Below are positions 24,330 to 63,600 of a stretch of DNA of 64,000 bases, piece after piece. The position numbers and the translations under genes were made by a program. The notes beneath the pieces are model-generated. The model ran no database searches and was not told the origin of the DNA. It worked only from the letters and a program-made list of their open reading frames with translations. Position 1 is the first letter of the stretch, and the number at the start of each line of letters is the position of its first letter. Location: IMG/VR virus record IMGVR_UViG_3300046787_000286, positions 1-64,000 of that record; one strand, given 5' to 3'.

Positions 24330-25620
24330 ACTTTCACCTAGCTTTTGTGCTGCCAAATGGTACAATGCTACTATATGGCTGGGCTCAGGGCAAACAACCA
24401 GTTGCCATCACCCTCCTGCACATGCCATAGATGCAGAAGCAGTTAAAACAAACCCTGCTGCATTGCACAATACCAAACAAAAGAAAATTGATCGTTTAAT
24501 GATGCAAAATGGGGAAAGACCCTCAGGTTGCGAATACTGTTGGAAAATTGAAGACATGGGAGTAGATGCAGTTAGCGATCGTGTGTACAAATCCAAGATA
24601 TATCCCATAAAGGCTTTAAATGACGCATACTCGACACCTGCTGCACATGACGTGGATCTCCGTACTTTGGAGATTGCTTTTGATCGTACTTGTCAGTTTG
24701 CTTGTAGCTATTGCAACCCAGCATTTAGTTCTACATGGGTTAATGATATTAAACGTAACGGACCCTACACTAACTTGGTTAGCGATGGTAGGAATCACTT
24801 CACTCATACTCATGAGTCTAGTCAGCTATATCGCTACGGGGAAACCAATCCGTATGTTGAGGCATTTTTTGACTGGTGGGAATCGAGCTTACATAGAACA
24901 CTTCAAGAGCTACGAATCACAGGAGGAGAGCCCCTCATGTCCGCCCACACATGGAAGCTCATTGATTGGTTCAAAACAAATTCGGGCAAGAGTAATACAC
25001 GCTTGGCTATCAATAGTAACCTCGGGACTGAGGTCGACGTCACACGTTTACTGGAATCCACGCAGGGTCTAGACGTAGAAATATACACTAGCATGGAAGC
25101 TGTAGGTGCGCAAGCTGAATACATTCGCGACGGACTTGTATATGCAGACTGGCAAGCAAACGTAGATAAGCTGTTAAACGCAGGTGTTACAGTACACTTT
25201 ATGGCAACCATTAATGCTCTTTGTTTGGAAACTCTAACAGATCATTTAAATTACTTGCTGACCTTGAAAGAATTATACGGGCGTGATCGTGTTAATTTTA
25301 CATTAAATATTCTACGCTTTCCGTCATTTCAAAGTGCTCTAGTACTGGATCCAGATGATCGCACCTATTTTAAATTGGCGTTGCAGTCATGGCTAAACGC
25401 CAACGGCAACAGCCCTTTATTGCACGAACACGAAGTTAATCACACACAACGATTAATTGATTACTTGGACATTGTTAAAACACCGCACTCGGATACGTTT
25501 GACATGCCCAAGTTACTGAATGACTTTAAACATTTCTACGAGCAATACGACCTGCGTAGGAAAAAGAATTTAAAAGAAACATTCCCTATTATTGGATATT
25601 GGTATAATTTATGTCTATAA
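24292..25620 (+). CDS. Radical SAM protein 2
   Basis: CQFACSYC, 'ITGGEP', N-terminal CAAKW..CHH and CEYCW; start probably ATG 24292. Confidence 0.9.
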   Translation: MNDLEYRQQVLDKLSPSFCAAKWYNATIWLGSGQTTSCHHPPAHAIDAEAVKTNPAALHNTKQKKIDRLMMQNGERPSGCEYCWKIEDMGVDAVSDRVYKSKIYPIKALNDAYSTPAAHDVDLRTLEIAFDRTCQFACSYCNPAFSSTWVNDIKRNGPYTNLVSDGRNHFTHTHESSQLYRYGETNPYVEAFFDWWESSLHRTLQELRITGGEPLMSAHTWKLIDWFKTNSGKSNTRLAINSNLGTEVDVTRLLESTQGLDVEIYTSMEAVGAQAEYIRDGLVYADWQANVDKLLNAGVTVHFMATINALCLETLTDHLNYLLTLKELYGRDRVNFTLNILRFPSFQSALVLDPDDRTYFKLALQSWLNANGNSPLLHEHEVNHTQRLIDYLDIVKTPHSDTFDMPKLLNDFKHFYEQYDLRRKKNLKETFPIIGYWYNLCL

Positions 25621-27314
25621 CCCAGACTTTAACAACATTGCGTGAACAATACAATGTGCTAGCAGTGGTCGATTTAGACCAAACTGCTAGCATGAGTTAT
25701 TCAGACATGCAAGATTGGCTGCGTAATCAGTGTCAATCCTTGTATGCGCCAGAGTTCAACCCAGGCGACAAAATTATTTTTACTTACTCAACAGACACGT
25801 ATGTAAATGATGATAAGATTGGGTTATTGATTCGCAATTTACAAATATCCATACTTGCAGTTGATATTAGTACTGCATTTATCACAGTGGTTAGCACAAA
25901 CCCAACGTTGCTAGCAGAACTAAAGCTAGTGCAAGCAATGAGTGAACTAGATATAGCAATTGACGGTGTAGTAGTTGATGCGCCTTGGAACAAAAAAATT
26001 GTCAACAAGTACCCTAGCTCTATTAGGGAGTTGTACGATTATGATTCTGTTAACCCATTAAAGATGTCAATTAATGATTTAAGTGATCGCGAGAGGTCAT
26101 TGCTTACCAAAAGTAAAGTATTTTGCATATACCCTTGGACACATTTAAATGCAGGTCCAGACGGACAGGCGTACCCGTGCTGCATGACTGATTTTAAATG
26201 TTCTGTGGGGGACACTAAAAAAGATACTCTGGCTACTATATGGAACAATGACCCAATGAAGCAGGTGCGCTTAGACATGCTAAACGAAACGCCCATTGAA
26301 GGATGTAGCCGCTGTTACGAACAAGAAAAGTCGGGCTTTGTTTCTGGCAGAATCAGTGCAAACAAGCACCACGGACATCATATTAGCAAGGTACTAGAAA
26401 CCAACCCCGACGGTAGCCTGGACCAATTTAAAATGGTGTACTGGGATATTCGATTTAGTAACTTGTGTAATTTACGGTGCCGTAGCTGTGGGCACATTTA
26501 CAGTAGTCAATGGTATCAAGATCAGGCCAAGCTAGCAGGGCCCGCCTGGGCAATTAACAATCAAGTGTTGAATTATGCAGGGCGCACCGAAACAGATATG
26601 TGGGAACAATTAGAACCCCATTTAGAGTACGTGGAGCAGATTTATTTCGCGGGCGGTGAGCCATTACTAATGGAAGAACACTATAACATTCTTGAAGAAT
26701 TACTCAAGCGTGGCCGCACAGATGTTCGATTGATATACAATACAAACTTTACGCACACTAAGTTAAAGGACAAGTATGTGTTTGAATACTGGAAAAAGTT
26801 TGATAGTGTTAGCGTAGGTGCAAGTTTAGACGCAATGGGCCCACGTGGCGAGTATATTAGAAAAGGCACAAACTGGGCGCAAGTTGAACGCAACAGAGAA
26901 AAGATGCTTGAAATTTGCCCGGGTGTTGATTTTTATATTAGTGCAACCCTGAGCATTCTAAATGCCAAACACCTGCCGGACTTTCATAAAAACTGGGTGG
27001 AGCGTGGACTTATTAAAACTCAGGACTTTAACGTAAACATTCTATTAGATCCTTCGTACTATCGAATTGACATTGCATCAGAACAGTACAAAGAAGAAAT
27101 AGCTGCACTGTATCGCGAACACTTGTTCTGGATTGAACAACACGGTGATCATCTTGGCCGTGCTACTACAGGATTTGAATCAGCTATTAAGTTAATGAAT
27201 GCAACGGACAACAGCACGTTAATTCCCAAGTTCTGGGAAAAGACTGAGCAGTTGGATGCTTTAAGAAATGAAACATGCTTGGATATCATACCTGAATTAA
27301 AGGCGCTAAAATGA
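25611..27314 (+). CDS. Radical SAM protein 3 with ~170-aa extra N-terminal domain
   Basis: CNLRCRSC, 'FAGGEP', FCIYPW..YPCC and CSRCY. Confidence 0.9.
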   Translation: MSITQTLTTLREQYNVLAVVDLDQTASMSYSDMQDWLRNQCQSLYAPEFNPGDKIIFTYSTDTYVNDDKIGLLIRNLQISILAVDISTAFITVVSTNPTLLAELKLVQAMSELDIAIDGVVVDAPWNKKIVNKYPSSIRELYDYDSVNPLKMSINDLSDRERSLLTKSKVFCIYPWTHLNAGPDGQAYPCCMTDFKCSVGDTKKDTLATIWNNDPMKQVRLDMLNETPIEGCSRCYEQEKSGFVSGRISANKHHGHHISKVLETNPDGSLDQFKMVYWDIRFSNLCNLRCRSCGHIYSSQWYQDQAKLAGPAWAINNQVLNYAGRTETDMWEQLEPHLEYVEQIYFAGGEPLLMEEHYNILEELLKRGRTDVRLIYNTNFTHTKLKDKYVFEYWKKFDSVSVGASLDAMGPRGEYIRKGTNWAQVERNREKMLEICPGVDFYISATLSILNAKHLPDFHKNWVERGLIKTQDFNVNILLDPSYYRIDIASEQYKEEIAALYREHLFWIEQHGDHLGRATTGFESAIKLMNATDNSTLIPKFWEKTEQLDALRNETCLDIIPELKALK

Positions 27315-33309: not shown

Positions 33310-33407
33310 AATGGATTAAAAATCTATGGGCAAGGATCACGTTAGAAATACGTTATCGTAAAAAACTAAAAGAACTACGTAAACGCGACCCATTTATCTA
33401 CAAATGA
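33306..33407 (+). CDS. 33-aa basic peptide (missed by ORF track)
   Basis: MKWIKNLWARITLEIRYRKKLKELRKRDPFIYK*; ATGA overlaps at both ends. Confidence 0.7.
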   Translation: MKWIKNLWARITLEIRYRKKLKELRKRDPFIYK

Positions 33408-34885
33408 ATACACTAGGCATATCAGCAGGGTTTCATGATGCAGCAGCGTCTGTAATTGACCGCGACGGTAACATACTGTTTGCCAGTCATTCTGAACGTT
33501 ATAGTAAACAAAAGAGTGACTCAGATATTTCGTTAGAAATGTTAAACGAAATAGATATGAGTACTGTAGATACCATTGCGTACTACGAGCGTCCTTTAGT
33601 TAAACAACTACGTCAATTTTATTCCGGACAAGGGATTGAGTGGGATAAGCTAACTACTCGACAAGTATTAGAACAACAGTTGGGCTACAACAGAATTGGC
33701 AATCGCAAGCTAAAAAGCTACAATCATCACTTGTGTCATGCAGCCGCAGGCTTTCAAACCAGCTCGTTTGATCGTGCTACTGTAGTTGTGATTGATGCAG
33801 TAGGCGAGTTTGAAACCATTACTATATGGGGAGCAGAATATGATAAACACGGTCGTGCAAAGTATAAGAAACTTTGGCAACAACATTACCCACATTCAAT
33901 TGGACTCTTTTACACTGGAGTTACTCAGCGGGTTGGCCTACGCCCACTAGACGAAGAATACATTCTAATGGGAATGGCAGCATACGGCAGTAACGACGTT
34001 AGTAATCGCATGCGTTATGATCTAATAGACGACGAATGGGAAATACGTTTCAAGGAGAACTTGCATCTAGGACTGTCAGTTAAATATCTAAGCGATTATT
34101 CAGACTTTGATATTGCTGCCGGCGCACAAGACTTGGTAGAAGACCTGATACTCAACGTTATGGTTCGAGCAAGAAAGTTCAAGTGGAGCAGTAATTTAGT
34201 CTACATGGGCGGTGTTGCTCTTAATTGCTCTGCTAATAGGAGAATTGGAAATTATTTCGATAATATATGGATTATGCCTAATCCTGGCGATGCTGGCAGT
34301 AGTCTTGGCGCTGCCGCTTTGGCTCATGGGCGTAAAATTAACTGGAGCAACGCTTATCTCGGGCATGATATTCCTGGTGCTTATCCTGTTAACGACATAC
34401 TTGATGAGCTACTTGTTCGGAAGATTGTGGGAGTGGCTTCCGGGAGAGCCGAGTTCGGTCCAAGAGCACTTGGAAACAGAAGCCTGCTTGCAGATCCTAG
34501 AGGCAGCGAGATTAAGGAGAAAGTAAATGACATTAAACGTAGACAACAATTCAGACCATTTGCGCCCGTTATTTTGGAGGAACTGGCTGATACTTACTTT
34601 GATATGCCTCGTGGCTTCAGTAATAGTAGGTATATGCAGTCAGTCGCTCGTTGTAGGGTACCTGAGTTATTTCCTGCTATCGTTCACGCTGACGGCACTA
34701 GTCGTGTTCAGACAGTGCCGAAAGATGGATCAGGCATTAGAGAACTGCTTGAAAAATGGTACGTAATGACTGACTGCCCCATGTTGCTTAACACAAGTTT
34801 AAACATACGTGGGGAGCCTATGGTTAACGATCGAGCAGACGCTGACCGCTTTGAACGAGAGTATGGGGTTAGAGTATGTTCTTAA
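33404..34885 (+). CDS. Carbamoyltransferase (NodU/CmcH family)
   Basis: 'GISAGFHDAAA', 'HHLCHAAA', 'GGVALNC', 'GRAEFGPRALGNRS', 'RQQFRPFAP', 'LLNTSLNIRGEP'. Confidence 0.95.
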   Translation: MNTLGISAGFHDAAASVIDRDGNILFASHSERYSKQKSDSDISLEMLNEIDMSTVDTIAYYERPLVKQLRQFYSGQGIEWDKLTTRQVLEQQLGYNRIGNRKLKSYNHHLCHAAAGFQTSSFDRATVVVIDAVGEFETITIWGAEYDKHGRAKYKKLWQQHYPHSIGLFYTGVTQRVGLRPLDEEYILMGMAAYGSNDVSNRMRYDLIDDEWEIRFKENLHLGLSVKYLSDYSDFDIAAGAQDLVEDLILNVMVRARKFKWSSNLVYMGGVALNCSANRRIGNYFDNIWIMPNPGDAGSSLGAAALAHGRKINWSNAYLGHDIPGAYPVNDILDELLVRKIVGVASGRAEFGPRALGNRSLLADPRGSEIKEKVNDIKRRQQFRPFAPVILEELADTYFDMPRGFSNSRYMQSVARCRVPELFPAIVHADGTSRVQTVPKDGSGIRELLEKWYVMTDCPMLLNTSLNIRGEPMVNDRADADRFEREYGVRVCS

Positions 34886-47596: not shown

Positions 47597-48445
47597 TTAT
47601 TTGCTTACGTTAATAAACGGGACATTGTTGCCAAGCACAGTGTTGGGCAGTTGACCGTTCCACTTTTCGATTGCTTGCAATTGTACGTATGCCGCGCCGC
47701 CTTGATGTTGAATGGCACTTGCTTGGATCGCAATAGCTTCGGCTTCACCTTTAGCTTGTGCAATACGGCTCTTAGCTTCAACTTGAATACGTTCGTAGTC
47801 TTGATCAGCTCGCAATTTGGCCTGTGTAGCAATAACCTTTTGCTCAATAGCATCTTGATATGCTTTGCTGAATCCAAAGTTAACCAAGCTCACGTTGTTC
47901 ACAACAATGTTGAATGGTGCCAACTTTTCGCTCAGTCGAGCCATAATGTCTAAGTTAACTGCATCGCGTTTGGTGATCAGTTCTTCACTGGTATAGTGAC
48001 CAACTGCTGACTTAAACGATTCGTTAATAGCCGGTCCTAGCACCTTTGTGTCTACGTCCAGTCCAAACTCTTTGTAGATGTGCGGCACTTTGTTTGGCGT
48101 CAAGCGATAGTTGATAACAATATCAGTATGCACTTGTTGAATATCTTTGGTGCCGGCACTTGCGTTATTCAAGTTAGCACGAGCAAGTCGAACGTCAACA
48201 TACTTGACATTACTAATTGGATTAACAAACTGAGCGCCTTCGGTTAGCACAGTTTGATTAACTTCGCCCATTGTAATCTGCACACCCACGTGACCAGCAG
48301 GCACAATAGTGAATGAGCTATAGATTACACCAATAGCAAAGATTACAATACCTGCTACATTAGCCAGCACTTTTTGCTGGAGGAAAACTGCAATAGCCGC
48401 AGATGCAACTACTGCAAGAATAAAGAAAAATACAATTGTAAACAT
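47597..48445 (-). CDS. SPFH/prohibitin (band 7) family membrane protein
   Basis: 'IVPAGHVGV', 'GTKDIQQV', 'EELITKRD', 'VSLVNFGFSKAY..AIEQK', 'IEKWNGQLP'; start ATG 48445. Confidence 0.9.
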   Translation of the reverse strand: MFTIVFFFILAVVASAAIAVFLQQKVLANVAGIVIFAIGVIYSSFTIVPAGHVGVQITMGEVNQTVLTEGAQFVNPISNVKYVDVRLARANLNNASAGTKDIQQVHTDIVINYRLTPNKVPHIYKEFGLDVDTKVLGPAINESFKSAVGHYTSEELITKRDAVNLDIMARLSEKLAPFNIVVNNVSLVNFGFSKAYQDAIEQKVIATQAKLRADQDYERIQVEAKSRIAQAKGEAEAIAIQASAIQHQGGAAYVQLQAIEKWNGQLPNTVLGNNVPFINVSK

Positions 48446-48603
48446 TATTTGATCCCACAAGCCGTTTTGATTTTGTCTGCTTCGACGCCGGCTTTGATAG
48501 CCTCGATGCGACATTGATTGTTACCGTATTCGATGATCACCAAGGGTGAAAACATTATTACGATAAACCCCATGAACATACCAACGATCCACTTATCACT
48601 CAT
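48445..48603 (-). CDS. 52-aa membrane peptide (missed by ORF track)
   Basis: MSDKWIVGMFMGFIVIMFSPLVIIEYGNNQCRIEAIKAGVEADKIKTACGIK*; TAATG coupling to the SPFH gene. Confidence 0.65.
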   Translation of the reverse strand: MSDKWIVGMFMGFIVIMFSPLVIIEYGNNQCRIEAIKAGVEADKIKTACGIK

Positions 48604-48841
48604 TTGTTACCTCCGGAACGTCTTTCCAGGCACTCCACTGCATGTTAGCAGTTTTTGCAAGACTTTCATTGTCCCACATGCCTGCAGCCGCAGCACGAAT
48701 TGTAACGTCAACCATTTGACGATACTGTAGCTTCTGCTTAACCACTGTGTGTTTGTCAAACTCCTTACCAAATTGGATTTCGTGCGCAGGAGGAACAATG
48801 TATTCTTCCTCCTCCCGGGCTAGCCACCGCATCTCTATCAT
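48596..48841 (-). CDS. Hypothetical protein
   Basis: 81 aa; 'MIEMRW...LQYRQ...WKDVPEV'. Confidence 0.65.
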   Translation of the reverse strand: MIEMRWLAREEEEYIVPPAHEIQFGKEFDKHTVVKQKLQYRQMVDVTIRAAAAGMWDNESLAKTANMQWSAWKDVPEVTNE

Positions 48842-50149
48842 TTAGCGACCTTTCTTTTCTTCGTCGTAGTAGGCGTATTGTCCCCATGGTGGAACAATGG
48901 TAGTAGTTCCGTGCAAGATAAACACTGTGTCAGTGTAGTTCTCGTCGCCCCAGCTACCAAATGGGTAACCGTCAGTAAACATAATCAAACGCTTGGGTTC
49001 AATTTCTTCTGCCTTCAAGTAGTTGTAAACACAGTCAAAGTCTGTGCCACCGCCACCTTTGACTTCGTAGTCACAGATTGAATCTAAGTTTTCTGAATCG
49101 TACTGAGCAGGATTGTATGCTTCAGTATCAAACGTCACAACGTGAATCTTGTAAGCAGGGAACGAGTCCATGATGCCTTGGATCTCACTCAAGAAGTCCT
49201 TTAGCATGCTTTCTGAAATAGAACCAGATGCGTCCAATGCCACAGCAATGTCAATCATTGGGTCCAGTTTCATGCCAGGCATAACTGCATCCATGTGCCA
49301 GCCTTTGCGGCTTGAGCGCATCCATGTGTAGTCGGACTTGATAGTAGATTCCAATTGCATACGCAACAGTTCACGCCAGTTCATCTTTGGCTCAGTCAAG
49401 TCATTGATCATGCGTTTGACGCCAGCTGGGATATTGCCTGCATCTTGTGTGGCACTTGCCGCTGCCAACATAGCTTCTTTGATCTCGTCCTTGATAGCGT
49501 CGCGATCAGCCTGGCTCAACTTTGGACGACCTTTGCCTTCTTGGTCGCCGTCGCCGTCGCCGTCACCTTCGCCATCCAAATGCTCGTCGATCATTTTGTC
49601 CAACAAGTCACTCATGTTGATCTTTTGAGCGTTTTGCATCAAGTCGTCATAAACTTCTTCTGAGCTCATGCCTTCGTATTTTTTGTCATACAAGCAAGGC
49701 ACAGTAGTAATCATTTCGCCCACGTTGTGCTTTTTCAAGTCTGCGTTAACACAGAAGTCGTTGGCAAAGTTCCAGATTTTTGGATCACGATCGCCACGGC
49801 GACCAAAGTGATCATAAACGCAGTGTAACACTTCGTGTCCAAACAAGAATTCAATTTCCTTTGGACGAAGCATTTCAACGAAACGAGTGTTGTAATAAAA
49901 ATTACGGCCGTCAGTTGCCGCAGTACCGCACCATTCATCGGCATTGATCAACTTCAAACGAGTGGCCAAGTTACCAAAGAAGCTGGCTTTCAACAGCAAG
50001 CCCACGCGGGCAGTGATCAGTTTTTCGCGAACTTTGCGATCCAGTGCTGGGTCTGTAGGGCCGATAAGATCTTTAAACTTAGCTGACTCTTTGCTGTCGG
50101 CAGTAGTGCCAGCAGTAGCATGCAGTACGTCTGGGTTAAAATATTGCAT
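48842..50149 (-). CDS. Putative metallopeptidase + vWA domain protein (DUF2201-like), MoxR partner
   Basis: 'TAATDG', 'HEVLH' (HExxH), 'DFCVN', vWA MIDAS 'LDASGSI', 'GGGGTDF', 'MFTDG'. Confidence 0.9.
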   Translation of the reverse strand: MQYFNPDVLHATAGTTADSKESAKFKDLIGPTDPALDRKVREKLITARVGLLLKASFFGNLATRLKLINADEWCGTAATDGRNFYYNTRFVEMLRPKEIEFLFGHEVLHCVYDHFGRRGDRDPKIWNFANDFCVNADLKKHNVGEMITTVPCLYDKKYEGMSSEEVYDDLMQNAQKINMSDLLDKMIDEHLDGEGDGDGDGDQEGKGRPKLSQADRDAIKDEIKEAMLAAASATQDAGNIPAGVKRMINDLTEPKMNWRELLRMQLESTIKSDYTWMRSSRKGWHMDAVMPGMKLDPMIDIAVALDASGSISESMLKDFLSEIQGIMDSFPAYKIHVVTFDTEAYNPAQYDSENLDSICDYEVKGGGGTDFDCVYNYLKAEEIEPKRLIMFTDGYPFGSWGDENYTDTVFILHGTTTIVPPWGQYAYYDEEKKGR

Positions 50150-53661: not shown

Positions 53662-54753
53662 TTAGGCCGAAGCCTGCAAAATGTACTTGCCGTACTTGTC
53701 GTGGAACTGATCAAAGTTCTTCAACTTGGTAGGCTGGAATGGCAAGTTGTATGTGGTAAGCGCAATACGAGCACCCATCACAACCAACTCAGTTTCAAAG
53801 TTCTTCATCATGTATGAGAAGAAGTTATCTGCCATTTCGTGGAACTTCTTAGAATCCACTTTTGCTTCCACTGCACCCTTCAATTCGTAGCACATGGAAA
53901 TCACCAGTGAGTACATCGCTGACACTTCCTTGACATTCAAGTCCATGACCTTGCCTGACAAAATGTCTTCTGGCTTGGGCATGCGACCTGCAATCTTACG
54001 GTGAGCCATAAACTTCACAGCAAGACCTTCGCCAACAGTACCTGCAATCAAGTTGGTTGCTGTTTCGTCATCTACAGTTTCGTCATCCAACAGCTGGCTC
54101 ACAAAGGTCCATGAACGTGGAGTAGCGAACGCCCGGCTTGCAGATTTTGCATCAAAGTCATACAAGTCTTGCTTGGCAAAGCTCAAGTAACCCACAACGT
54201 CTTTGTTGATGTTGGCGTTAACGGCCCATTCTTGCCAGCTTGGGAAGTCAACACGCATTTCTTGGTGAACAAAACGGTTGCTCAACGGAGTTGGCATACG
54301 ATATGTCACACCTTTGTCTGACTCACGGTTACCTGCGGCAACCATAACCACGTTGTCTGGCAACATATACTTGCCAATACGACGGTTCAAAATCAACTGA
54401 TAAGCCGCAGATTGCACAGAAGGTGCAGCCGAGTTCATTTCGTCCAAGAACAACACCACAACTGGGTATTGTGCGGCAGTTTCTGCGTCGGGCAAGTCAA
54501 CTGGAGCTGCCCAGTCCATTTTGCCATTGTCTTTGTTGTAGAATGGGATACCACGAATGTCTGTGGGCTCCATCTGACCTAAACGCAAGTCATACATGAT
54601 ACCACCGAGGTCCTTGGTAATACCTTCAACAAGCTCTGACTTACCGATACCAGGAGGGCCCCACAAGAAGATTGGGCGTTTAACTTTGAAAGCCTGCAAA
54701 ATGGATTTACGGGCTTGGACTGCGGTAACGGTACGTGCATCTGATACTGACAT
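53662..54753 (-). CDS. MoxR-like AAA+ ATPase
   Basis: Walker A 'GPPGIGKS', 'DIRGIP', Walker B 'LFLDEMN', 'AAGN', 'LSNRF', 'TPRSW'. Confidence 0.92.
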   Translation of the reverse strand: MSVSDARTVTAVQARKSILQAFKVKRPIFLWGPPGIGKSELVEGITKDLGGIMYDLRLGQMEPTDIRGIPFYNKDNGKMDWAAPVDLPDAETAAQYPVVVLFLDEMNSAAPSVQSAAYQLILNRRIGKYMLPDNVVMVAAGNRESDKGVTYRMPTPLSNRFVHQEMRVDFPSWQEWAVNANINKDVVGYLSFAKQDLYDFDAKSASRAFATPRSWTFVSQLLDDETVDDETATNLIAGTVGEGLAVKFMAHRKIAGRMPKPEDILSGKVMDLNVKEVSAMYSLVISMCYELKGAVEAKVDSKKFHEMADNFFSYMMKNFETELVVMGARIALTTYNLPFQPTKLKNFDQFHDKYGKYILQASA

Positions 54754-57658: not shown

Positions 57659-58174
57659 TCAACTGTTTAGAACACGAGCAACACTAGTGATTACACTAGC
57701 AATCCGCCCGATATCGCGCAACTGCTCAACTGTGTAACCTTCTTGTTTTAAAGTCTCGTAGTGAGCCTTTACACAAAAATGGCACTTGCCTACAATACTC
57801 GCTGCCAAGCTGTATGCTTCGAATCGAGCTTTAGTTGTGCCGCCATGTGAACTAATAGCGTTCATGCGTAACTGGGCCGGCAAACCTTTTAAGTTCTCGT
57901 CATCGGCCATTTCGACATAGGGGTACCAGATGTTGTTTTGTGCCATGATCGAGCCGGCTGTTAGTGCAGCATCACGCTCTTTTGTGTCAACAATGCTGCT
58001 ACTAATAAAAGTAATCAGTTTGCCGTTACCTGTTGCAAAGGCCGCAGCCAGTGCAATTGCTTCTGCTTCCTCTGGTGCCAAGGTACTGCGTTTGATCACA
58101 GCGTCAAGATTTAACTTGGTGTCCTTAGCATACTCAGGAAGACCTTCTTTAAGTTGGTCTACCCATGCAGTCAT
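57659..58174 (-). CDS. ahpD: Alkyl hydroperoxidase AhpD
   Basis: 'YAKDTKLNL', 'MAQNNIWY', 'KCHFCVKAH' CxxC; TAATG-coupled to ahpC. Confidence 0.9.
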   Translation of the reverse strand: MTAWVDQLKEGLPEYAKDTKLNLDAVIKRSTLAPEEAEAIALAAAFATGNGKLITFISSSIVDTKERDAALTAGSIMAQNNIWYPYVEMADDENLKGLPAQLRMNAISSHGGTTKARFEAYSLAASIVGKCHFCVKAHYETLKQEGYTVEQLRDIGRIASVITSVARVLNS

Positions 58175-58713
58175 TACAGAGTCTCCCCGCCTACTGTACG
58201 GTTACAAGCGCAAAGTTCGCCAGTCTGCAATGCGTCAAGAATACGCAGAGTTTCTTCTGGGCTACGGCCAACGTCCAAGTTGTTGACAGTAACGTGTTGG
58301 ATAACGTTGTCCGGGTCAACGATGAATGTTGCGCGAAGTGCCGCACCTGCTGGCGCATAGAACACACCTAGTTGTTCGACCAAGCTCAACTCACCACGCT
58401 GTGTATCAGCAAACTGAGTGTGAGTAATTTTCTTCAAATCACTGTGTGCCATTTGCCATGCTGTCTTACAGAACTCGTTGTCTGTTGAACCTGTTAGCAA
58501 TACTGCATCGCGATCAGCAAAGTCACCAGTCAACTTATCGTAGGCCACAATTTCAGTTGGGCAAACGAATGTGAAGTCTTTTGGATAGAACACGATTACT
58601 TTCCATTTGCCTTCGAAGCTTTGGTCTGTAATTGTGAAGTATGCGTCTTCTGGTTGGCCTGGCTTAACTCCTGTGACTGCGAACGCTGTTAGTTTATCAC
58701 CGATTGTTTTCAT
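58174..58713 (-). CDS. ahpC: Peroxiredoxin AhpC
   Basis: 'FYPKDFTFVCPTE' peroxidatic Cys, 'RATFIVDP', 'GELCACNR'. Confidence 0.95.
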   Translation of the reverse strand: MKTIGDKLTAFAVTGVKPGQPEDAYFTITDQSFEGKWKVIVFYPKDFTFVCPTEIVAYDKLTGDFADRDAVLLTGSTDNEFCKTAWQMAHSDLKKITHTQFADTQRGELSLVEQLGVFYAPAGAALRATFIVDPDNVIQHVTVNNLDVGRSPEETLRILDALQTGELCACNRTVGGETL

Positions 58714-59068: not shown

Positions 59069-59152
59069 TGGTGCCCAGGGCGAGACTCGAACTCGCACGG
59101 ATTTCTCCACTACCACCTCAAGATAGCGTGGCTACCATTACACCACCTGGGC
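59069..59152 (-). tRNA. tRNA-Leu(GAG)
   Basis: GCCCAGG/CCTGGGC acceptor, CTATC-TTGAGGT-GGTAG anticodon arm, long variable arm, TTCGAGT, CCA. Confidence 0.93.
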
Positions 59153-59527
59153 TTATCTTATTGCTTTTGCTCTAGCGTGAATAACATCATCAACATTGCC
59201 TTTAACAATGACATTGGTGTAGGTGTCTACAAATTCGCTAGCATGATCTACCACACGATTGTCAGGTTCGTGGTAGGTCCTAACTCGCTCGCTACCTGCT
59301 AGGTTGCGTTCCTTGTCTTTGTGGAAGTGTGCCTGAATGCGTGACAAGCAGGTAATGTAGGCTGCACGTTTGTTATCTTCGCGGCTACGGCTGTTAGTGC
59401 CGTTCGCTTGAATGCCAGTGGGCTCATGAATGCATCGGCAACAATTTTGATGCTTGTTACGATGTTGCCCACCTTTGCCTGTTCCAGAGAACCACTCGTA
59501 ACGAAATTGATCTTCTGTAATTTTCAT
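59153..59527 (-). CDS. Truncated class-I peptide release factor (GGQ domain; ArfB/PrfH-like)
   Basis: 'WFSGTGKGGQHRNK...IHEPTGI...SRSREDNK..A' plus RF-like 'ERVRTYHEPDNRVVDH'; start ATG 59527 with AGGAG RBS. Confidence 0.85.
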   Translation of the reverse strand: MKITEDQFRYEWFSGTGKGGQHRNKHQNCCRCIHEPTGIQANGTNSRSREDNKRAAYITCLSRIQAHFHKDKERNLAGSERVRTYHEPDNRVVDHASEFVDTYTNVIVKGNVDDVIHARAKAIR

Positions 59528-59541
59528 TGCAGTCTCCTGAT

Positions 59542-59616
59542 TGGTGCGCGATGAGAGATTCGAACTCCCGACATCTGTCGAGTCAGAACAGCGCTCTACC
59601 ACTGAGCTAATCGCGC
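59542..59616 (-). tRNA. tRNA-Val(GAC), atypical U37
   Basis: GCGCGAT/ATCGCGC acceptor, canonical D and T arms, CTGTT-CTGACTC-GACAG anticodon arm, A73, CCA. Confidence 0.85.
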
Positions 59617-59794
59617 AAAAAAAGCAGTAGGGTTACTGCAAACAGAATGAACTGAGTGGCTTGCCCTACTGCGGATGTTGTGTGCATACTACTTGTCTCA
59701 TTATACTCCGCATGCAAGGGAGAGGCTTCTAACAGTAGGCGTTTAGAGTTCGGCGTTAGCGGAAACATCTAACCGTTTTGTCCTACTGTGTTAT

Positions 59795-59877
59795 TGGTGC
59801 GGACGGTGAGACTCGAACTCACACGCACTAGGCACTGGCTTCTAAGACCAGCGTGGCTACCATTACACCACGTCCGC
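59795..59877 (-). tRNA. tRNA-Leu(TAG)
   Basis: GCGGACG/CGTCCGC acceptor, CTGGT-CTTAGAA-GCCAG, long variable arm, CCA. Confidence 0.93.
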
Positions 59878-59883
59878 AATTTT

Positions 59884-60111
59884 TTATCTAACTTTTTTAA
59901 GATACTCTGGACCGACTTTGCCGGCTTGCACTTCAAGTAATGCAGTAACTGAAGCATTCAACTGACCAGGATTTTCTGATCGTTTATGCCTGACAATAAG
60001 TTCACGCACTCTAGCAGATGCTGCGATTACTAAATCGAATCTGTTGCCAATTTGTTCAACACAAGCGTCTGTATCAATTTGAGTTCCGCGACTTTCAGTG
60101 AGAATTTTCAT
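59884..60111 (-). CDS. rpoZ: RNA polymerase omega subunit homologue
   Basis: 'CVEQIGNRFDLVIAASARVREL...TALLEVQAGKV' matches the omega pattern (NRF.LV..A..RAR.L...AL.EI..GK). Confidence 0.8.
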   Translation of the reverse strand: MKILTESRGTQIDTDACVEQIGNRFDLVIAASARVRELIVRHKRSENPGQLNASVTALLEVQAGKVGPEYLKKVR

Positions 60112-60131
60112 AAAATATCTAAGTTAGTTGT

Positions 60132-60205
60132 TGGATGCGGGAGACAGATTCGAACTGCCGATGCACCTGGCTTATGAGACCGGTGTGGTGGCCACCCTTC
60201 CCGCG
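60132..60205 (-). tRNA. tRNA-Met(CAT), initiator-like but atypical
   Basis: C1:A72 mismatch, CTCATAA loop, GGCAG-TTCGAAT-CTGTC T arm, CCA; reduced D arm and U73. Confidence 0.75.
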
Positions 60206-60212
60206 TAATTAC

Positions 60213-60779
60213 TTATACCAATTGTTCTGCTTGGAGCAAAGCAACTGTGTCGGCATCCAATTCGATTTCGGTGCGAACGTTGAGTTCTAACACTTTGTCA
60301 TTGATGCTTTGCTTTTCTTTCTTGAGGCTTCGCATGTCGGCTTTGTAGGCTTCGATTTGAAGGTTGTCTAACACGCCAGTGTCGACGTTGTCGTTGTAAC
60401 CGTAAACACGGTTCTTGTTGTCTGTGTTGCGAAGTTTTTCTAACTTGCCGTTGAGAACAACGTAAGACTCAGCAGCCTTGCTCTCTGTCAGGCCTTTCAG
60501 GTGTCCTAGACGCTTGTCAACAAACGCAGCTTCAGCAAGCAAATCGCTTACGCCACTTTCTACGTTAGCACGACCAACACGGGCACGGATGCCATACAAC
60601 ACCTTGGTCAACTTTGCACGACGAAGGTCGCTTTCAACTAATGCACCACGTGCAACAGCGATCTCACCTTCAACGGTCTGGAACTCGTTTAGGGAGATCG
60701 ATGTTTTTACATCAATGGTTTTGATGTGATCCTGAATTGTGTTTTGCAGGGCGTTTGCTTTGCGAAGTGTAATCTTCAT
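60213..60779 (-). CDS. Coiled-coil hypothetical protein
   Basis: 188 aa 'MKITLRKANALQ...'; AAGGAA RBS. Confidence 0.8.
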   Translation of the reverse strand: MKITLRKANALQNTIQDHIKTIDVKTSISLNEFQTVEGEIAVARGALVESDLRRAKLTKVLYGIRARVGRANVESGVSDLLAEAAFVDKRLGHLKGLTESKAAESYVVLNGKLEKLRNTDNKNRVYGYNDNVDTGVLDNLQIEAYKADMRSLKKEKQSINDKVLELNVRTEIELDADTVALLQAEQLV

Positions 60780-60789
60780 ATTCGAGTTC

Positions 60790-61084
60790 CTTTCTATTTG
60801 AATTAGTAGCAGTGAGCGTATGGCAAGTCAATCGCCGGACAATGTGCAAGAGACATTAGCGAATGATAATTTTTCAGGTTATCACTTTACTAAAGCAAAA
60901 TACAAGAGACAGAGGATACCAATATTTCCGAGCATCAACAAACAGCGACTATAACAGCCAGTATAATCTCGGATCACTGGATCACGATTGGTAATTCCAG
61001 TAAGCATTTCAAGTGCTAACTAGAGGTGCAATCTCTCATCTCCATACACATCACAGTCCTGTTTTAAGAAACAGGCAAAAACTT
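60790..61084 (-). ncRNA. Candidate structured leader/ncRNA
   Basis: ~295 nt with no ORF in the track; hairpins CCTGTTT/AAACAGG, ACTGGA/TCCAGT, TCCGAG/CTCGGA and TGATAA/TTATCA; TGTCTCTTG occurs twice. Confidence 0.4.
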
Positions 61085-61162
61085 TGGAGTCCCGGGTAGG
61101 ATTCAAACCTACGAATCGATGGATTTGCAATCCACGCCATTAAGTCGCTCTGGTACCGAGAC
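61085..61162 (-). tRNA. tRNA-Cys(GCA)
   Basis: GTCTCGG/CCGGGAC acceptor, GTGGA-TTGCAAA-TCCAT, U73, CCA; T loop TTTGAAT. Confidence 0.9.
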
Positions 61163-61167
61163 ATATT

Positions 61168-61250
61168 CTTTATATGTAAACACACTAAAACGCGACCTTA
61201 GTTTCCCAGTTACGGTATTGTCAGTTGGTATAATGTGTTTGCATATAAAG
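61168..61250 (-). ncRNA. 83-nt element closed by a 17-bp stem
   Basis: CTTTATATGCAAACACA ... TGTGTTTACATATAAAG (one G-U pair). Confidence 0.45.
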
Positions 61251-62158
61251 TGGCGGACTGAGAATACATCCTAACCTAGTAACACCTCGGACATTATTAC
61301 AAACCTTGCGAGTCTGCTTTCTTCCGACTTCCACTAAAACCATATTGCTATGTATTCTAGTCTGTTACCAGTATCGCCGTTTTTAAAGACAGGCAGTAGT
61401 CTTGTCGTCACATGCTACTCTACACCATCTATCCCGTTGACCTTTAGAGCCATTCACTGTCGCTAAACAGCTACGAAACTTCCAGTATAAACAGATTTCA
61501 CCTTGCGAGTTACGTCTGACTGTATTGCCTTGCGGCTACAGCATTAGATACTTTTCACACATGACCGAGTCAGTCTTTGCATTTTAATCGTTAGCGGGAG
61601 TTGAACCCGCAGTCGACTCCTTAACAGGGAGTTGGCCTACCATTAGCCTATAACAACCTACTGCGATGTGCTGACTCAGTTGCTTCATACTCTTTTGGAA
61701 TACAAAATACAACACACCACGTTCCTTTTGTCTTGCGAACTACTCAGACGTCTTTTGCGATATGTGTCGGGTCTCGGCTTTCGCGTACCTCCACTTACCA
61801 CTCAAACTGCATACGAGCCCTAGGGTGCAACCCCTCGGACAAATACACTACCCTTTCTCATACCAATTAACTGGACTGGTTTCGTTGTGAAGTCAGCACC
61901 ACCTGTTACTTTCCATCTACTCAAGTTCCCCTTGATGCAATCTCAGGCTTGTAAGCAAACGTTCTTTCCACAACATCCAGCGTCATTGTTACAACCACCG
62001 GTCTTATCAGTGATCGCTCCCTTGCAGGAGTGAGCAGGCTTGCCTAAGTGAACTATTTTTAGTAGCGGAGTTATGTAGGCATACCTCCTTTGGCTGTGTC
62101 ACCACAGTTATTCTTCACTAGATAGCAAGCTACCTAGTAGGACATTAAGCTGCCCTTA
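61251..62158 (-). ncRNA. Large ornate ncRNA, GOLLD-like
   Basis: ~900 nt ORF-free, behind a perfect sigma70 promoter, next to tRNAs; many GNRA (GCAA/GAAA)-capped hairpins; embedded tRNA in a helix tip; boundaries approximate. Confidence 0.7.
61586..61657 (-). tRNA. tRNA-Asn(GTT) embedded in the large ncRNA, no encoded CCA
   Basis: GTTGTTA/TAACGAT acceptor, GGCT-AATGGTA-GGCC D arm, ACTCC-CTGTTAA-GGAGT, GCGGG-TTCAACT-CCCGC. Confidence 0.8.
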
Positions 62159-62164
62159 TATTCT

Positions 62165-62193
62165 ATTATAACATTGATTGCTGCACTTGTCAA
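62165..62193 (-). promoter_or_regulatory. Consensus sigma70 promoter TTGACA-17-TATAAT
   Basis: Perfect consensus; points into the large ncRNA/tRNA array. Confidence 0.88.
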
Positions 62194-62210
62194 CCATCAA
62201 CATTACCAAA

Positions 62211-62325
62211 TCTGTAAACAACTGCACACTTACAGGACTCGAACCTGACGACCAGGGCAATAGCCCTAGCTATGAATCCAACCATATCAGCGTGGCCTAC
62301 GCCTTTATGTGCATGTGTTTAAAGA
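62211..62325 (-). ncRNA. 115-nt tRNA-like small RNA without CCA
   Basis: Ends pair (TCTTTAAACA..TGCACA / TGTGCA..TGTTTACAGA); internal hairpins GCGT/ACGC and CTAGGGC/GCCCTGG; T arm CAGG-TTCGAGT-CCTG; has its own promoter. Confidence 0.55.
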
Positions 62326-62347
62326 CTTTGTTACTGTCTAAGTATCT

Positions 62348-62376
62348 ATTATAGCAAATTACGATATACTTGTCAA
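62348..62376 (-). promoter_or_regulatory. Consensus sigma70 promoter TTGACA-17-TATAAT
   Basis: Perfect consensus with TGC extension; drives the 115-nt element. Confidence 0.88.
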
Positions 62377-62406
62377 CTACTTTTTTGCATTTTGGGTAAA
62401 GTGTTA

Positions 62407-62414
62407 TATAAATA
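62407..62414 (+). promoter_or_regulatory. T4-type late promoter TATAAATA
   Basis: Exact T4 late consensus, 7 nt before ATG 62422. Confidence 0.7.
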
Positions 62415-62421
62415 TTCCACT

Positions 62422-63600
62422 ATGAATAAATCTAAAACTTTTTGTATAGCCACTCATGTTTGTATGGCAGTACAAAACGAAGTTGACTACTGTTGTTGCA
62501 ACGCCAACAAAGAAAGTTGGAAAACAAATGACCACCAAGTCATGCGTGTAAACGAACACTCTCCCAAACAAGCCTGGAACAGCTATTCTCGTAAAATAAT
62601 AAGAGAAGTATTAGATAATGGGCAACAACATCATTCGTGCCAGAAGTGTTGGGACATTGAGGCTGCTGGTAGCATAAGTCAACGTATGACATTGAATAAT
62701 ATGTTTGTTGATGTTGAGTTACTCAACGACCAACCGCAGATTATAATTATAAAACCCGGAAATACTTGTAATTTTGCATGCCGAATGTGCAATCCTGAAA
62801 CTAGCTCAAGCTGGTATTCGGATGCATACAAATTAGAAAAATCTACTTTGCCCTTTTCCGAATACACTCGTAAGTTTGAAACTATACGAAACAGTTTTAA
62901 CCGTGATAATGAAAATTTTTGGAATACCTTCAAACAGTGGTTGCCAACTATAAAGTACATTGACATTTACGGCGGAGAACCATTCTTAGCTCCTGCATTG
63001 TTTGATCTACTAGAGCACGGAGTTAACATAGGTGCTGCAAAAGAAGTTTCTTTGCAACTGCATACAAATGCATCAATCATGAATCAACATTATCTTGATA
63101 TTTTAAGTCAGTACAAAAAAGTTACCTGTAAAGTAAGTATTGATTCAAGTGATCCGAAGAAAAACGATTACATACGGCATCAAGGAAACTTTGATAAAAC
63201 AATAGCTAATGCAAAATTATTCAAAACATTTTTTGATCAACATAAAAATTTAAATTTTGGAGTAACATACACACTTACGCCGTTGAATGTGTTCCATGTG
63301 GATCAAGATAAAGAACTTATTAGCGAACTATTAGAATTACCTAAAATAGATGTAAACATAGTAACTACACCAGAATACGACATACGTCACTTACCGATTC
63401 CAGTTAAGGACTTTCTAATTAATAATATTAACGATAGCTCGGTGAACAATTTTCTAAAACAAACTATACCAGGTTGCGACATTGAGTGGCCAAAATTCTG
63501 TAAAGTAACTGATGAGTTAGATGCCATACGCAACCAAAGTTTTGCCGAAACATTCCCCGAATGGTGGGAAATGCTCAAACCATACTGGGTGTCTCAATGA
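62422..63600 (+). CDS. Radical SAM protein 8 (same family as the island paralogues)
   Basis: CNFACRMC, 'YGGEP', FCIATH..YCCC and CQKCW; start ATG 62422. Confidence 0.9.
   Translation: MNKSKTFCIATHVCMAVQNEVDYCCCNANKESWKTNDHQVMRVNEHSPKQAWNSYSRKIIREVLDNGQQHHSCQKCWDIEAAGSISQRMTLNNMFVDVELLNDQPQIIIIKPGNTCNFACRMCNPETSSSWYSDAYKLEKSTLPFSEYTRKFETIRNSFNRDNENFWNTFKQWLPTIKYIDIYGGEPFLAPALFDLLEHGVNIGAAKEVSLQLHTNASIMNQHYLDILSQYKKVTCKVSIDSSDPKKNDYIRHQGNFDKTIANAKLFKTFFDQHKNLNFGVTYTLTPLNVFHVDQDKELISELLELPKIDVNIVTTPEYDIRHLPIPVKDFLINNINDSSVNNFLKQTIPGCDIEWPKFCKVTDELDAIRNQSFAETFPEWWEMLKPYWVSQ

What the first reader, a model, noticed from the sequence alone, without database searches (positions are those of the whole stretch)
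61251..62158. ~900-nt GOLLD-like giant ncRNA with a tRNA-Asn grafted onto a helix tip
Seen: an ORF-free stretch behind a perfect TTGACA-17-TATAAT promoter. It has repeated GCAA-capped hairpins (CTCCT-GCAA-GGGAG 62017-62030, GCC-GCAA-GGC 61527-61536, ACTC-GCAA-GGT 61500-61510 and 61301-61315). A full tRNA-Asn(GTT) without CCA is flanked by complementary arms ACTGAGTCAG / CTGACTCGGT, so it sits at the end of a helix of the larger RNA. Established: GOLLD RNAs are large ornate phage RNAs near tRNA clusters, some containing tRNAs, with unknown function. Inference: the embedded tRNA is either cargo displayed on the RNA assembly or excised by RNase P/Z.
Basis: partly seen in the sequence, partly recalled or inferred. 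Interest (0 to 1): 0.8.

Follow-up and report, generated by a model that had tools for sequence, protein, structure and literature searches.

The report
GOLLD phage RNA with built-in tRNA-like domain
This is a real, highly expressed ~900-nt GOLLD RNA of a 214-kb freshwater jumbo phage; GOLLD is a known family that builds hollow RNA cages, and the 'tRNA-Asn' in its inward-facing linker looks like a permanent tRNA-shaped domain rather than a working tRNA gene.

Summary
Window 61255-62158 (minus strand) is a GOLLD RNA. Rfam RF02032 scores 197.6 bits (cut-off 150, E 3e-54) over the 3' half. The 5' half aligns with relatives, and 63 of 120 predicted pairs show compensatory change. A perfect TTGACA-17-TATAAT promoter sits directly upstream. 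Contigs from four freshwater metatranscriptomes cover only this unit. One RNA contig, identical to the window, spans the whole tRNA and both junctions.

The two arms around the tRNA form a helix that covaries across about 50 GOLLDs, with or without a tRNA. It closes the known variable linker J13/15, which faces the cage interior in the published cryo-EM structure. A tRNA in this linker is already published, so this is a new member of a known kind.

What I add concerns the insert. In this freshwater clade it is its own tRNA-like lineage:
- None of 10 embedded copies encodes CCA, against 199 of 200 free tRNAs in the same loci.
- The acceptor ends are weak or mismatched.
- The anticodon drifts on near-identical backbones (GTT, TTT, CTT, ATT, TGG, TGA, TTG, TGT).
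- The D, anticodon and T stems are kept by compensatory changes.

Best reading: a tethered, non-decoding, tRNA-shaped luminal domain. Its function is still unknown.

The parts
62165..62193 (-). Sigma-70-type promoter TTGACA-17-TATAAT with a TG-extended -10 box; expected start near 62158
   Evidence: 12 of 12 matches. Close relatives keep a promoter at the same place: L081 has TTGACA..TATAAT and L034 has TTGACA..TACAAT. RNA contigs reach 62150 and stop there.
61255..62158 (-). Full-length GOLLD RNA, about 900 nt
   Evidence: Rfam RF02032 covers 61720-61255. The 5' part aligns from just after the -10 box. Metatranscriptome contigs cover only this unit. Homology to other phages is limited to 61232-62171.
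61721..62158 (-). GOLLD 5' domain, the variable half that the Rfam model does not cover
   Evidence: RNAalifold on 7 relatives: 120 predicted pairs, 63 of them with compensatory changes. It includes the GCAA hairpin at 62017-62030.
61663..61720 (-). First conserved stem of the 3' region (Rfam model positions 1-62; probably P13/P14), with an A-rich loop CCAAAAGA and a 9-nt 3' bulge
   Evidence: cmscan alignment. The same hairpin appears in the thermodynamic fold.
61671..61680 (-). 5' arm ACUGAGUCAG (core GAGUCAG), lying in the bulge of the first stem
   Evidence: It pairs with 61573-61564. The helix covaries in 47 of 50 GOLLDs (sequences).
61586..61657 (-). tRNA-shaped module with anticodon GUU, no CCA, and an acceptor stem of 7 pairs that includes two G-U pairs and only one G-C pair
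   Evidence: Rfam tRNA 64 bits; ARAGORN; acceptor and stem statistics.
61574..61585 (-). Conserved 3' part of the linker (AAAAUGCAAAGA, matching the family-wide AAAGCAAAAG motif), directly after the tRNA discriminator
   Evidence: cmscan alignment; invariant columns; variants listed.
61564..61573 (-). 3' arm CUGACUCGGU (core CUGACUC), closing the linker loop
61255..61566 (-). Conserved GOLLD 3' domain: a long-range 10-bp helix, GCAA- and CGCAA-capped hairpins, and the terminal GUAUUCUCAG motif
   Evidence: cmscan alignment to RF02032 positions 130-416.

Best explanation
The locus encodes a GOLLD RNA of a 214-kb freshwater jumbo phage.

Shown:
- It is transcribed from its own strong sigma-70 promoter as a single ~900-nt RNA.
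- That RNA is abundant in freshwater metatranscriptomes.
- At least part of it still contains the tRNA.

Inferred from solved GOLLD structures:
- It folds into a 5' cap domain and a conserved 3' domain.
- It self-assembles into a 10- to 14-subunit hollow cage.
- The linker between the two domains points into the lumen.

In this clade the linker is closed by a covarying 7-10-bp helix and is occupied by a tRNA-shaped module. That module is most likely a permanent, covalently tethered domain and not a tRNA gene that gets released. Selection keeps its D, anticodon and T stems, and hence the L-shaped core. Its 3' CCA is absent, its acceptor end is weak or mismatched, and its anticodon mutates freely. 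Each cage would then hold one tRNA-like body per subunit inside.

My best guess at the purpose, which is inference only, is to bind or trap a tRNA-recognising partner inside the cage.
For: Family:
- Rfam GOLLD scores 197.6 bits, E 3e-54, over the full model. Ten relatives score 181-215 bits.
- The 5' domain covaries, with 63 of 120 pairs showing compensatory change.

Expression:
- Four metatranscriptomes from four studies cover about 61278-62150 and show zero depth on 61062-61223 and 62196-62500. Summed depth reaches 430,000, against about 45 on the adjacent gene.
- A 127-nt RNA contig identical to the window spans 61551-61677, which is the tRNA plus both junctions (record 13).

Linker helix:
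- It is 7/7 paired in 47 of 50 GOLLDs, with about 10 compensatory variants.
- The thermodynamic fold reproduces it.
- Literature: the linker is luminal, and tRNAs are sometimes present in it (PMC12286853). A tRNA-Phe in J13/15 points inward (PMC12990946).

Not a working tRNA:
- 0 of 10 embedded copies encode CCA, against 199 of 200 free tRNAs in the same loci.
- A free, CCA-bearing tRNA with the same anticodon is present in the same arrays: L081, L047/L055, L040, L034, L082.
- Each embedded copy's nearest relative is another embedded copy (0.66-0.87 identity), whatever the anticodon. For nine of the ten this is clearly closer than any free tRNA, none of which exceeds 0.72; for L040 the two tie at 0.66.
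- Near-identical backbones carry GTT, TTT and ATT; or CTT and TTT; or TGG, TGA and TTG. There are 11 different anticodon loops among 28 variants. Three variants have lost the tRNA altogether.
- Each acceptor stem has one G-C pair, and its outer three pairs are paired in only 17 of 30 cells. Free tRNAs have no mismatch in 131 of 146 and a mean of 4.4 G-C pairs.
- The D stem is paired in 40/40 cells, the anticodon stem in 50/50 and the T stem in 47/50, each with several pair types. A larger set gives 112/112, 137/140 and 126/140.
- Precedent: a pseudo-tRNA inside the GOLLD of Mycobacterium aubagnense was not detected as a free RNA by Northern blot (PMC6582537).
Against: - The window's own copy is the best preserved of the clade: 7 of 7 acceptor pairs (two of them G-U), a canonical 7-nt anticodon loop and 64 bits. 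Release by RNase P and RNase Z cannot be excluded for this particular phage.
- Absence of CCA is also what RNase Z needs in a substrate (established knowledge).
- RNA depth dips over the tRNA by 2- to 7-fold. I attribute this to sequence divergence among the pooled variants, but partial excision would look the same.
- Only assembled contigs were available, not reads. No molecule ends could be seen, and free tRNA-sized RNA would not be captured in any case.
- Cage assembly and luminal placement are transferred from structures of other GOLLDs and were not tested on this sequence.
- No binding partner is known.
Confidence: 0.65

Rival explanations
1. The insert is a genuine tRNA-Asn gene that uses GOLLD as its transcription unit. 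RNase P cuts at its 5' end and RNase Z after the discriminator; lack of CCA is what allows RNase Z to act. The host CCA-adding enzyme then completes the tRNA. The two GOLLD halves stay together through the arm helix and the first stem.
For: - The tRNA score is high at 64 bits, with canonical D and T loops, U33 and A37.
- The window copy has 7 of 7 acceptor pairs.
- RNA depth is lower over the tRNA than on either side.
- Established knowledge: RNase Z requires CCA-less precursors, and phage T4 has CCA-less tRNAs that host enzymes mature.
- The arm helix could hold the two halves together.
Against: - Relatives carry anticodons that make no decoding sense on the same backbone: ATT, and TGA on a body without a long variable arm.
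- The outer acceptor pairs are mismatched in most copies.
- 199 of 200 neighbouring tRNAs encode CCA.
- A free tRNA with the same anticodon is present in the same arrays.
- An intact RNA contig spans both junctions.
- The mycobacterial GOLLD pseudo-tRNA was not detected as a free RNA.
Confidence: 0.2
2. The tRNA-like insert is a neutral passenger. A tRNA was captured once in a linker that tolerates any sequence, is now decaying, and contributes nothing to GOLLD.
For: - The linker is variable across GOLLDs, with 55-81 nt between the arms and no shared sequence.
- Some clade members have deleted the tRNA (L133, L117, L124) or damaged its T and D loops (L026, L134, L135, L166).
- The anticodon drifts.
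Against: - Across 28 distinct variants the D stem is 112/112 paired, the anticodon stem 137/140 and the T stem 126/140, each with many compensatory pair types. This indicates purifying selection on the fold rather than decay.
- The insert's position and flanking motifs (GUAGGUU on the 5' side, AAAAUGCAAAG on the 3' side) are fixed.
- 9 of 10 Rfam-tested relatives still pass the tRNA cut-off.
Confidence: 0.13
3. The region is not a structured RNA at all. It would be a chance intergenic stretch that happens to contain a tRNA gene.
For: None beyond the lack of any blastn match in isolated-phage genomes.
Against: Rfam E 3e-54; covariation; RNA coverage restricted to the unit; more than 70 homologous loci.
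Confidence: 0.01

Closest known systems
GOLLD RNA (Rfam RF02032; Weinberg et al. 2009; cryo-EM of env-38 GOLLD, Kretsch et al. 2025, PMC12286853; Streptococcus agalactiae GOLLD as reviewed in PMC12990946)
   Same: - Full-length match to the covariance model.
- Two-domain layout with a variable 5' half and a conserved 3' half, about 900 nt in total.
- Phage-encoded and set within a tRNA cluster.
- A-rich loop on the first conserved stem, and many GNRA-type GCAA caps.
- A variable linker between the domains that can hold a tRNA.
   Different: Nothing that breaks membership. This copy belongs to a freshwater jumbo-phage clade in which the linker carries a clade-specific tRNA-like lineage, with the fixed flanks GUAGGUU and AAAAUGCAAAG. 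Oligomeric state is unknown for this sequence.
GOLLD of Mycobacterium/Mycolicibacterium tRNA arrays, with a tRNA-Phe or 'pseudo-tRNA' in J13/15 (PMC6582537; Morgado 2020 as cited in PMC12990946)
   Same: A tRNA-like element inside the same linker, with GOLLD sitting inside a large tRNA array. The embedded element was called a pseudo-tRNA and was not seen as a free RNA.
   Different: Different host group (actinobacterial prophage-like arrays versus a freshwater jumbo phage), and a different anticodon. I could not compare the sequences because that paper's data were not available here.
ROOL RNA nanocages
   Same: A large phage-associated RNA near tRNA islands that forms a cage with a disordered luminal linker.
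   Different: An unrelated sequence and fold. No ROOL hit in the window, either at gathering threshold or at E<=1.
tRNA-like structures that are part of larger RNAs (plant-virus 3' TLS; the mascRNA element of MALAT1). This comparison is from my own knowledge and was not tested here.
   Same: A tRNA-shaped fold embedded in a longer transcript, kept for its shape rather than for decoding.
   Different: Viral TLS elements are 3'-terminal and are aminoacylated. mascRNA is excised by RNase P and RNase Z. Here the module is internal, CCA-less, and appears to stay in the RNA.

Membership tests
GOLLD RNA (RF02032) | Score at or above the curated gathering cut-off of the family covariance model, over the whole model | tested here: met
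   197.6 bits against a cut-off of 150, E 3.2e-54, model positions 1-416 of 416, not truncated.
GOLLD RNA (RF02032) | Helices of the conserved 3' domain supported by covariation in homologues | tested here: met
   The alignment of 12 clade members keeps all hairpins, with compensatory changes. The linker-closing helix has about 10 compensatory variants in 50 GOLLDs.
GOLLD RNA (RF02032) | A large, less conserved, structured 5' domain, giving a total length of about 800 nt or more | tested here: met
   About 440 nt lie upstream of the Rfam hit, with 120 predicted pairs of which 63 show compensatory change. Total length is about 900 nt.
GOLLD RNA (RF02032) | Phage or prophage location, usually next to tRNA genes | tested here: met
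   The window is 100% identical to part of a 214,006-bp IMG/VR viral contig. tRNA-Cys, Leu, Val and Leu lie downstream. Relatives sit in arrays of up to 32 tRNAs.
GOLLD RNA (RF02032) | Expressed as a stable, non-coding RNA | tested here: met
   RNA contigs from 4 metatranscriptomes cover only the unit, at very high depth. No ORF longer than 58 aa.
GOLLD RNA (RF02032) | Self-assembly into a 10- to 14-subunit cage with the linker inside | not testable with these tools
   Known only from cryo-EM of other members. It would need cryo-EM or native gels of this RNA.
Functional (decoding) tRNA | Cloverleaf with canonical D, anticodon and T arms | tested here: met
   Rfam tRNA 64 bits. Stems are kept by compensatory change across the clade.
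Functional (decoding) tRNA | A 3' CCA end, encoded as in the phage's other tRNAs | tested here: not met
   0 of 10 embedded copies, against 199 of 200 free tRNAs in the same loci. Post-transcriptional addition was not testable.
Functional (decoding) tRNA | A regular 7-bp acceptor stem | tested here: inconclusive
   The window copy has 7 of 7 pairs, but two are G-U and only one is G-C. In relatives the outer three pairs are paired in 17 of 30 cells.
Functional (decoding) tRNA | Anticodon conserved within an orthologous lineage | tested here: not met
   GTT, TTT, ATT, CTT, TGG, TGA, TTG and TGT occur on closely related backbones, with 11 different loops among 28 variants.
Functional (decoding) tRNA | Released from its precursor and aminoacylated | not testable with these tools
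   Only assembled RNA contigs were available. One contig spans both junctions intact.

The most novel reading that the evidence does not exclude
The cage lumen is lined with 10-14 tethered, CCA-less tRNA mimics whose job is to capture a tRNA-recognising factor during infection. Candidates are a host anticodon nuclease or another tRNA-targeting defence enzyme, a tRNA-modifying or processing enzyme, or the ribosome. GOLLD would then be an RNA-only decoy or trap that protects the phage's large tRNA array. The NUU bias of the anticodons (Asn and Lys types) would reflect the preferred targets of such nucleases. That last link comes from my memory of the PrrC and PARIS literature and was not tested here.
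Probability: 0.12. Interest if true: 0.85.

Novelty: new member of a known kind. Interest (0 to 1): 0.45.

Why it matters
GOLLD is among the largest bacterial or phage non-coding RNAs whose structure is solved but whose function is unknown. The published idea is that the cage may carry 'phage-encoded tRNAs' in its linker.

This locus and about 30 distinct relatives show that, in one abundant freshwater jumbo-phage clade, the linker insert is selected for tRNA shape. It is not selected for a CCA end, a regular acceptor stem or a fixed anticodon.

That narrows the functional question from tRNA delivery or storage to what recognises a tRNA body inside an RNA cage. It also offers a natural series of variants for experiments: intact, elbow-damaged and deleted. 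The RNA's very high level in lake metatranscriptomes shows that it is a major phage product in nature.

Tried and rejected
- blastn of the locus against 50,697 isolated-phage records found nothing. tblastn with a neighbouring 601-aa protein gave only a 27% hit to Ralstonia phage RsoM2USA. The phage has no cultured close relative, so host assignment was dropped.
- My first broad motif scan returned 119 loci, but only about 51 carried additional GOLLD motifs. The rest were treated as chance matches and ignored.
- I tried to locate the loop that kisses the linker (published as L20 with J13/15) by looking for complements to the conserved GCAAAAG segment. No convincing partner emerged, so it is left open.
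- I could not obtain Weinberg 2009 or Morgado 2020. Mapping my helices onto the published P13/P14/P15 names is therefore inferred from text only.
- I considered that the drop in RNA depth over the tRNA reflects excision. This was not adopted because contigs of variants with different tRNAs break exactly at the tRNA borders (loose ends at 61585 and 61655), and an identical contig bridges them.
- Pfam and PHROG scans of neighbouring ORFs found no CCA-adding enzyme, RNase Z or other tRNA-processing gene in the window.
- Rfam did not recognise the odd tRNA-like gene at 62224-62312, even at E<=1.

Full report
**What is there.** On the minus strand, window 62158-61255 is an ORF-free unit (no ORF longer than 58 aa). 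It lies behind a perfect TTGACA-17-TATAAT promoter at 62193-62165. The Rfam GOLLD model RF02032 matches 61720-61255 over its full length, at 197.6 bits against a cut-off of 150 and E 3.2e-54. ARAGORN and Rfam both call a tRNA with anticodon GTT at 61658/61657-61585/61586 (64 bits). In the GOLLD alignment it falls inside the insertion that corresponds to the family's variable linker. A thermodynamic fold of 61725-61543 gives the first conserved hairpin, a 10-bp arm helix, and a clean cloverleaf inside the loop that this helix closes.

**Genome context.** The window is 100% identical over 4,372 nt to IMG/VR contig UViG_3300046787_000286, which is 214,006 bp. It is therefore part of a freshwater jumbo phage. 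Related GOLLDs sit on viral contigs of 145-371 kb. No cultured phage is close. Downstream on the same strand lie tRNA-Cys, Leu(TAG), Val and Leu(GAG).

**Boundaries and expression.**
- Homology to other phages runs only from about 61232 to 62171. The multiple alignment begins to be conserved right after the -10 box.
- Public runs that hold this sequence are freshwater, riverine and estuarine metagenomes and metatranscriptomes.
- I laid the contigs of four metatranscriptomes from four different studies on 60900-62500. They cover about 61278-62150 and nothing in 61062-61223 or 62196-62500.
- Summed depth reaches about 430,000 in one run, against about 45 on the neighbouring coding gene.
- This matches the predicted start and the end of the Rfam hit. 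It also makes DNA contamination an unlikely source.
- Depth is a poor measure of expression, and it pools relatives that are at least 88% alike. Even so, the RNA is clearly a major transcript.
- One 127-nt RNA contig identical to the window spans 61551-61677, which is the whole tRNA with both junctions (record 13).
- Depth dips 2- to 7-fold over the tRNA. Contigs of variants carrying other tRNA sequences break exactly at 61585 and 61655 (loose ends). I therefore read the dip as divergence among the pooled variants.

**The 5' half.** Rfam models only the 3' domain. Seven relatives align over the 5' 440 nt. RNAalifold predicts 120 pairs there, 63 of them with compensatory double changes. This fits the literature description of GOLLD as having a less conserved 5' domain.

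**The arms.**
- In about 50 GOLLDs recovered from viral contigs, the 7 nt just 5' of the long-range helix of the 3' domain pair with 7 nt in the 3' bulge of the first conserved stem.
- The pairing is 7/7 in 47 of 50 sequences. The 5' partner lies at one fixed position, directly before the 3' strand of the outer stem.
- Examples are GAGTCAG/CTGACTC, GTGGCAG/CTGCCAC, CCTGAAG/CTTCAGG, CTCGAAG/CTTCGAG, CCCGAAG/CTTCGGG, CCACACA/TGTGTGG, GGGGCAG/CTGCCCC and TCCACTG/CAGTGGA.
- Mismatched controls reach 7/7 in only 13% of trials, and at no fixed place.
- The helix exists whether or not a tRNA is present. It is a conserved GOLLD helix that closes the linker, and it forms a pseudoknot with the outer stem.
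- From the published names J13/15 and L15 it is probably the helix called P15. That is inferred, since I could not see the figures.
- Between the arms, tRNA-less GOLLDs have 55-81 nt and tRNA-bearing ones have 96-102 nt.

**What is already known.** Kretsch et al. solved a GOLLD as a 14-subunit cage. Its variable linker is unresolved but placed in the interior. They note that phage-encoded tRNAs are sometimes present in the linker (PMC12286853). A review cites a tRNA-Phe in J13/15 of a Mycolicibacterium GOLLD, pointing inward, and 10-, 12- and 14-subunit forms (PMC12990946). In Mycobacterium aubagnense the element inside GOLLD was called a pseudo-tRNA, and no free RNA from it was detected (PMC6582537).

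**What the insert is.**
- A clade-specific pattern found 72 loci with 31 distinct linkers.
- Ten relatives tested with Rfam are all GOLLD (181-215 bits). Nine of them have a tRNA hit in the linker, at 47.7-62.5 bits. The tRNA always ends about 30 nt before the same anchor.
- CCA: in these loci 199 of 200 free-standing tRNAs encode CCA, and 0 of 10 embedded ones do.
- Redundancy: a free CCA-bearing tRNA with the same anticodon is present in the same array in L081, L047/L055, L040, L034 and L082.
- Lineage: the nearest relative of every embedded copy is another embedded copy, at 0.66-0.87 identity, whatever its anticodon. No free tRNA exceeds 0.72, and for nine of the ten copies the embedded relative is clearly the closer one; for L040 the two tie at 0.66. 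The free tRNA-Asn genes of these phages are 0.77-1.0 identical to each other but only 0.53-0.67 to embedded ones.
- Anticodon drift: near-identical backbones carry GTT (L047), TTT (L032, L172) and ATT (L008). Others carry CTT (L014) and TTT (L118); or TGG (L040), TGA (L121) and TTG (L132); or GTT (L146) and a shifted TGT loop with a pyrimidine at position 37 (L143). In all there are 11 different anticodon loops among 28 variants.
- Acceptor stem: embedded copies have one G-C pair, and their outer three pairs are paired in only 17 of 30 cells. Free tRNAs have no mismatch in 131 of 146 and a mean of 4.4 G-C pairs.
- Core stems: the D stem is 40/40 paired, the anticodon stem 50/50 and the T stem 47/50, each with several pair types per position. 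In the larger set the figures are 112/112, 137/140 and 126/140.
- Losses: some lineages have damaged D and T loops (L026, L134, L135, L166) or have deleted the module (L133, L117, L124).

Together these results point to a GOLLD-specific tRNA-like lineage. It is selected for the tRNA core fold and not for decoding.

**Mechanism, with its status.**
- Shown: a promoter-driven ~900-nt RNA; high abundance; an RNA that includes the tRNA; a conserved helix closing the linker; and selection on the tRNA core fold but not on CCA, the acceptor end or the anticodon.
- Inferred from solved relatives: cage assembly and luminal placement, giving one tethered tRNA-like body per subunit inside.
- Speculative: that the body binds or traps a tRNA-recognising factor.
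- Main rival: the window's copy, which is the best preserved in the clade, is cut out by RNase P and RNase Z, and lack of CCA serves RNase Z. I give this 0.2.
- Second rival: the insert is a neutral decaying passenger. The compensatory changes argue against it (0.13).

**Verdict.** This is a new member of a known family in a known tRNA-bearing configuration. The comparative evidence on the nature of the insert is the part a specialist might find useful.

Noticed in passing
window 62224-62312 (-), promoter 62376-62348 (-): A second perfect TTGACA-17-TATAAT promoter drives an 89-nt tRNA-like gene just upstream of GOLLD. The gene has a 7-bp acceptor stem with one mismatch, a long variable arm (Ser-like type II), a 6-nt anticodon loop UUGGAU and no CCA. 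ARAGORN calls it 'tRNA-?(Pro|Ser)(gg)'. Rfam gives no tRNA hit even at E<=1. It folds well (z -2.9). No RNA contigs covered it.
   Followed up: partly
window 59069-61162 (-): All four ordinary tRNAs of the cluster (Leu-GAG, Val-GAC, Leu-TAG, Cys-GCA) encode 3' CCA. No promoter-like site lies between the GOLLD 3' end (61255) and tRNA-Cys (61162), so tRNA-Cys may be co-transcribed with GOLLD.
   Followed up: partly
window 21878-23269, 25611-27314, 62392-63600 (+); 33404-34885 (+): There are three radical-SAM-domain ORFs and a Nol-like carbamoyltransferase (PHROG E 2e-93) in one phage window. This suggests a phage-borne modification or biosynthesis gene set.
   Followed up: no
window 1239-15566 (+): A single 4,775-aa ORF, presumably a giant virion or injected protein. 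It was not analysed.
   Followed up: no
window 47597-50149 and 53662-54753 (-); 57659-58713 (-): Host-like accessory genes are present: an SPFH/Band-7 protein, a DUF2201 metallopeptidase-VWA protein with a MoxR-like AAA ATPase, and an AhpC peroxiredoxin next to a CMD-family protein.
   Followed up: no
L133 (metagenome contig JACCDW010493889.1), linker of its GOLLD: Here the tRNA module is reduced to a 31-nt linker that joins the conserved leader GTAGGTT directly to a T-loop remnant (GGTTCAACTCC). This looks like a deletion between the two GGTTCAA-like repeats. It is a natural tRNA-less control within the clade.
   Followed up: partly
window 61935-61943 region (5' domain hairpin): The window has about 9 extra nt in one 5'-domain hairpin compared with relatives (alignment A1, columns 543-551). 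One RNA contig lacks exactly 9 nt at 61935. Length variants of this hairpin therefore coexist in nature.
   Followed up: no
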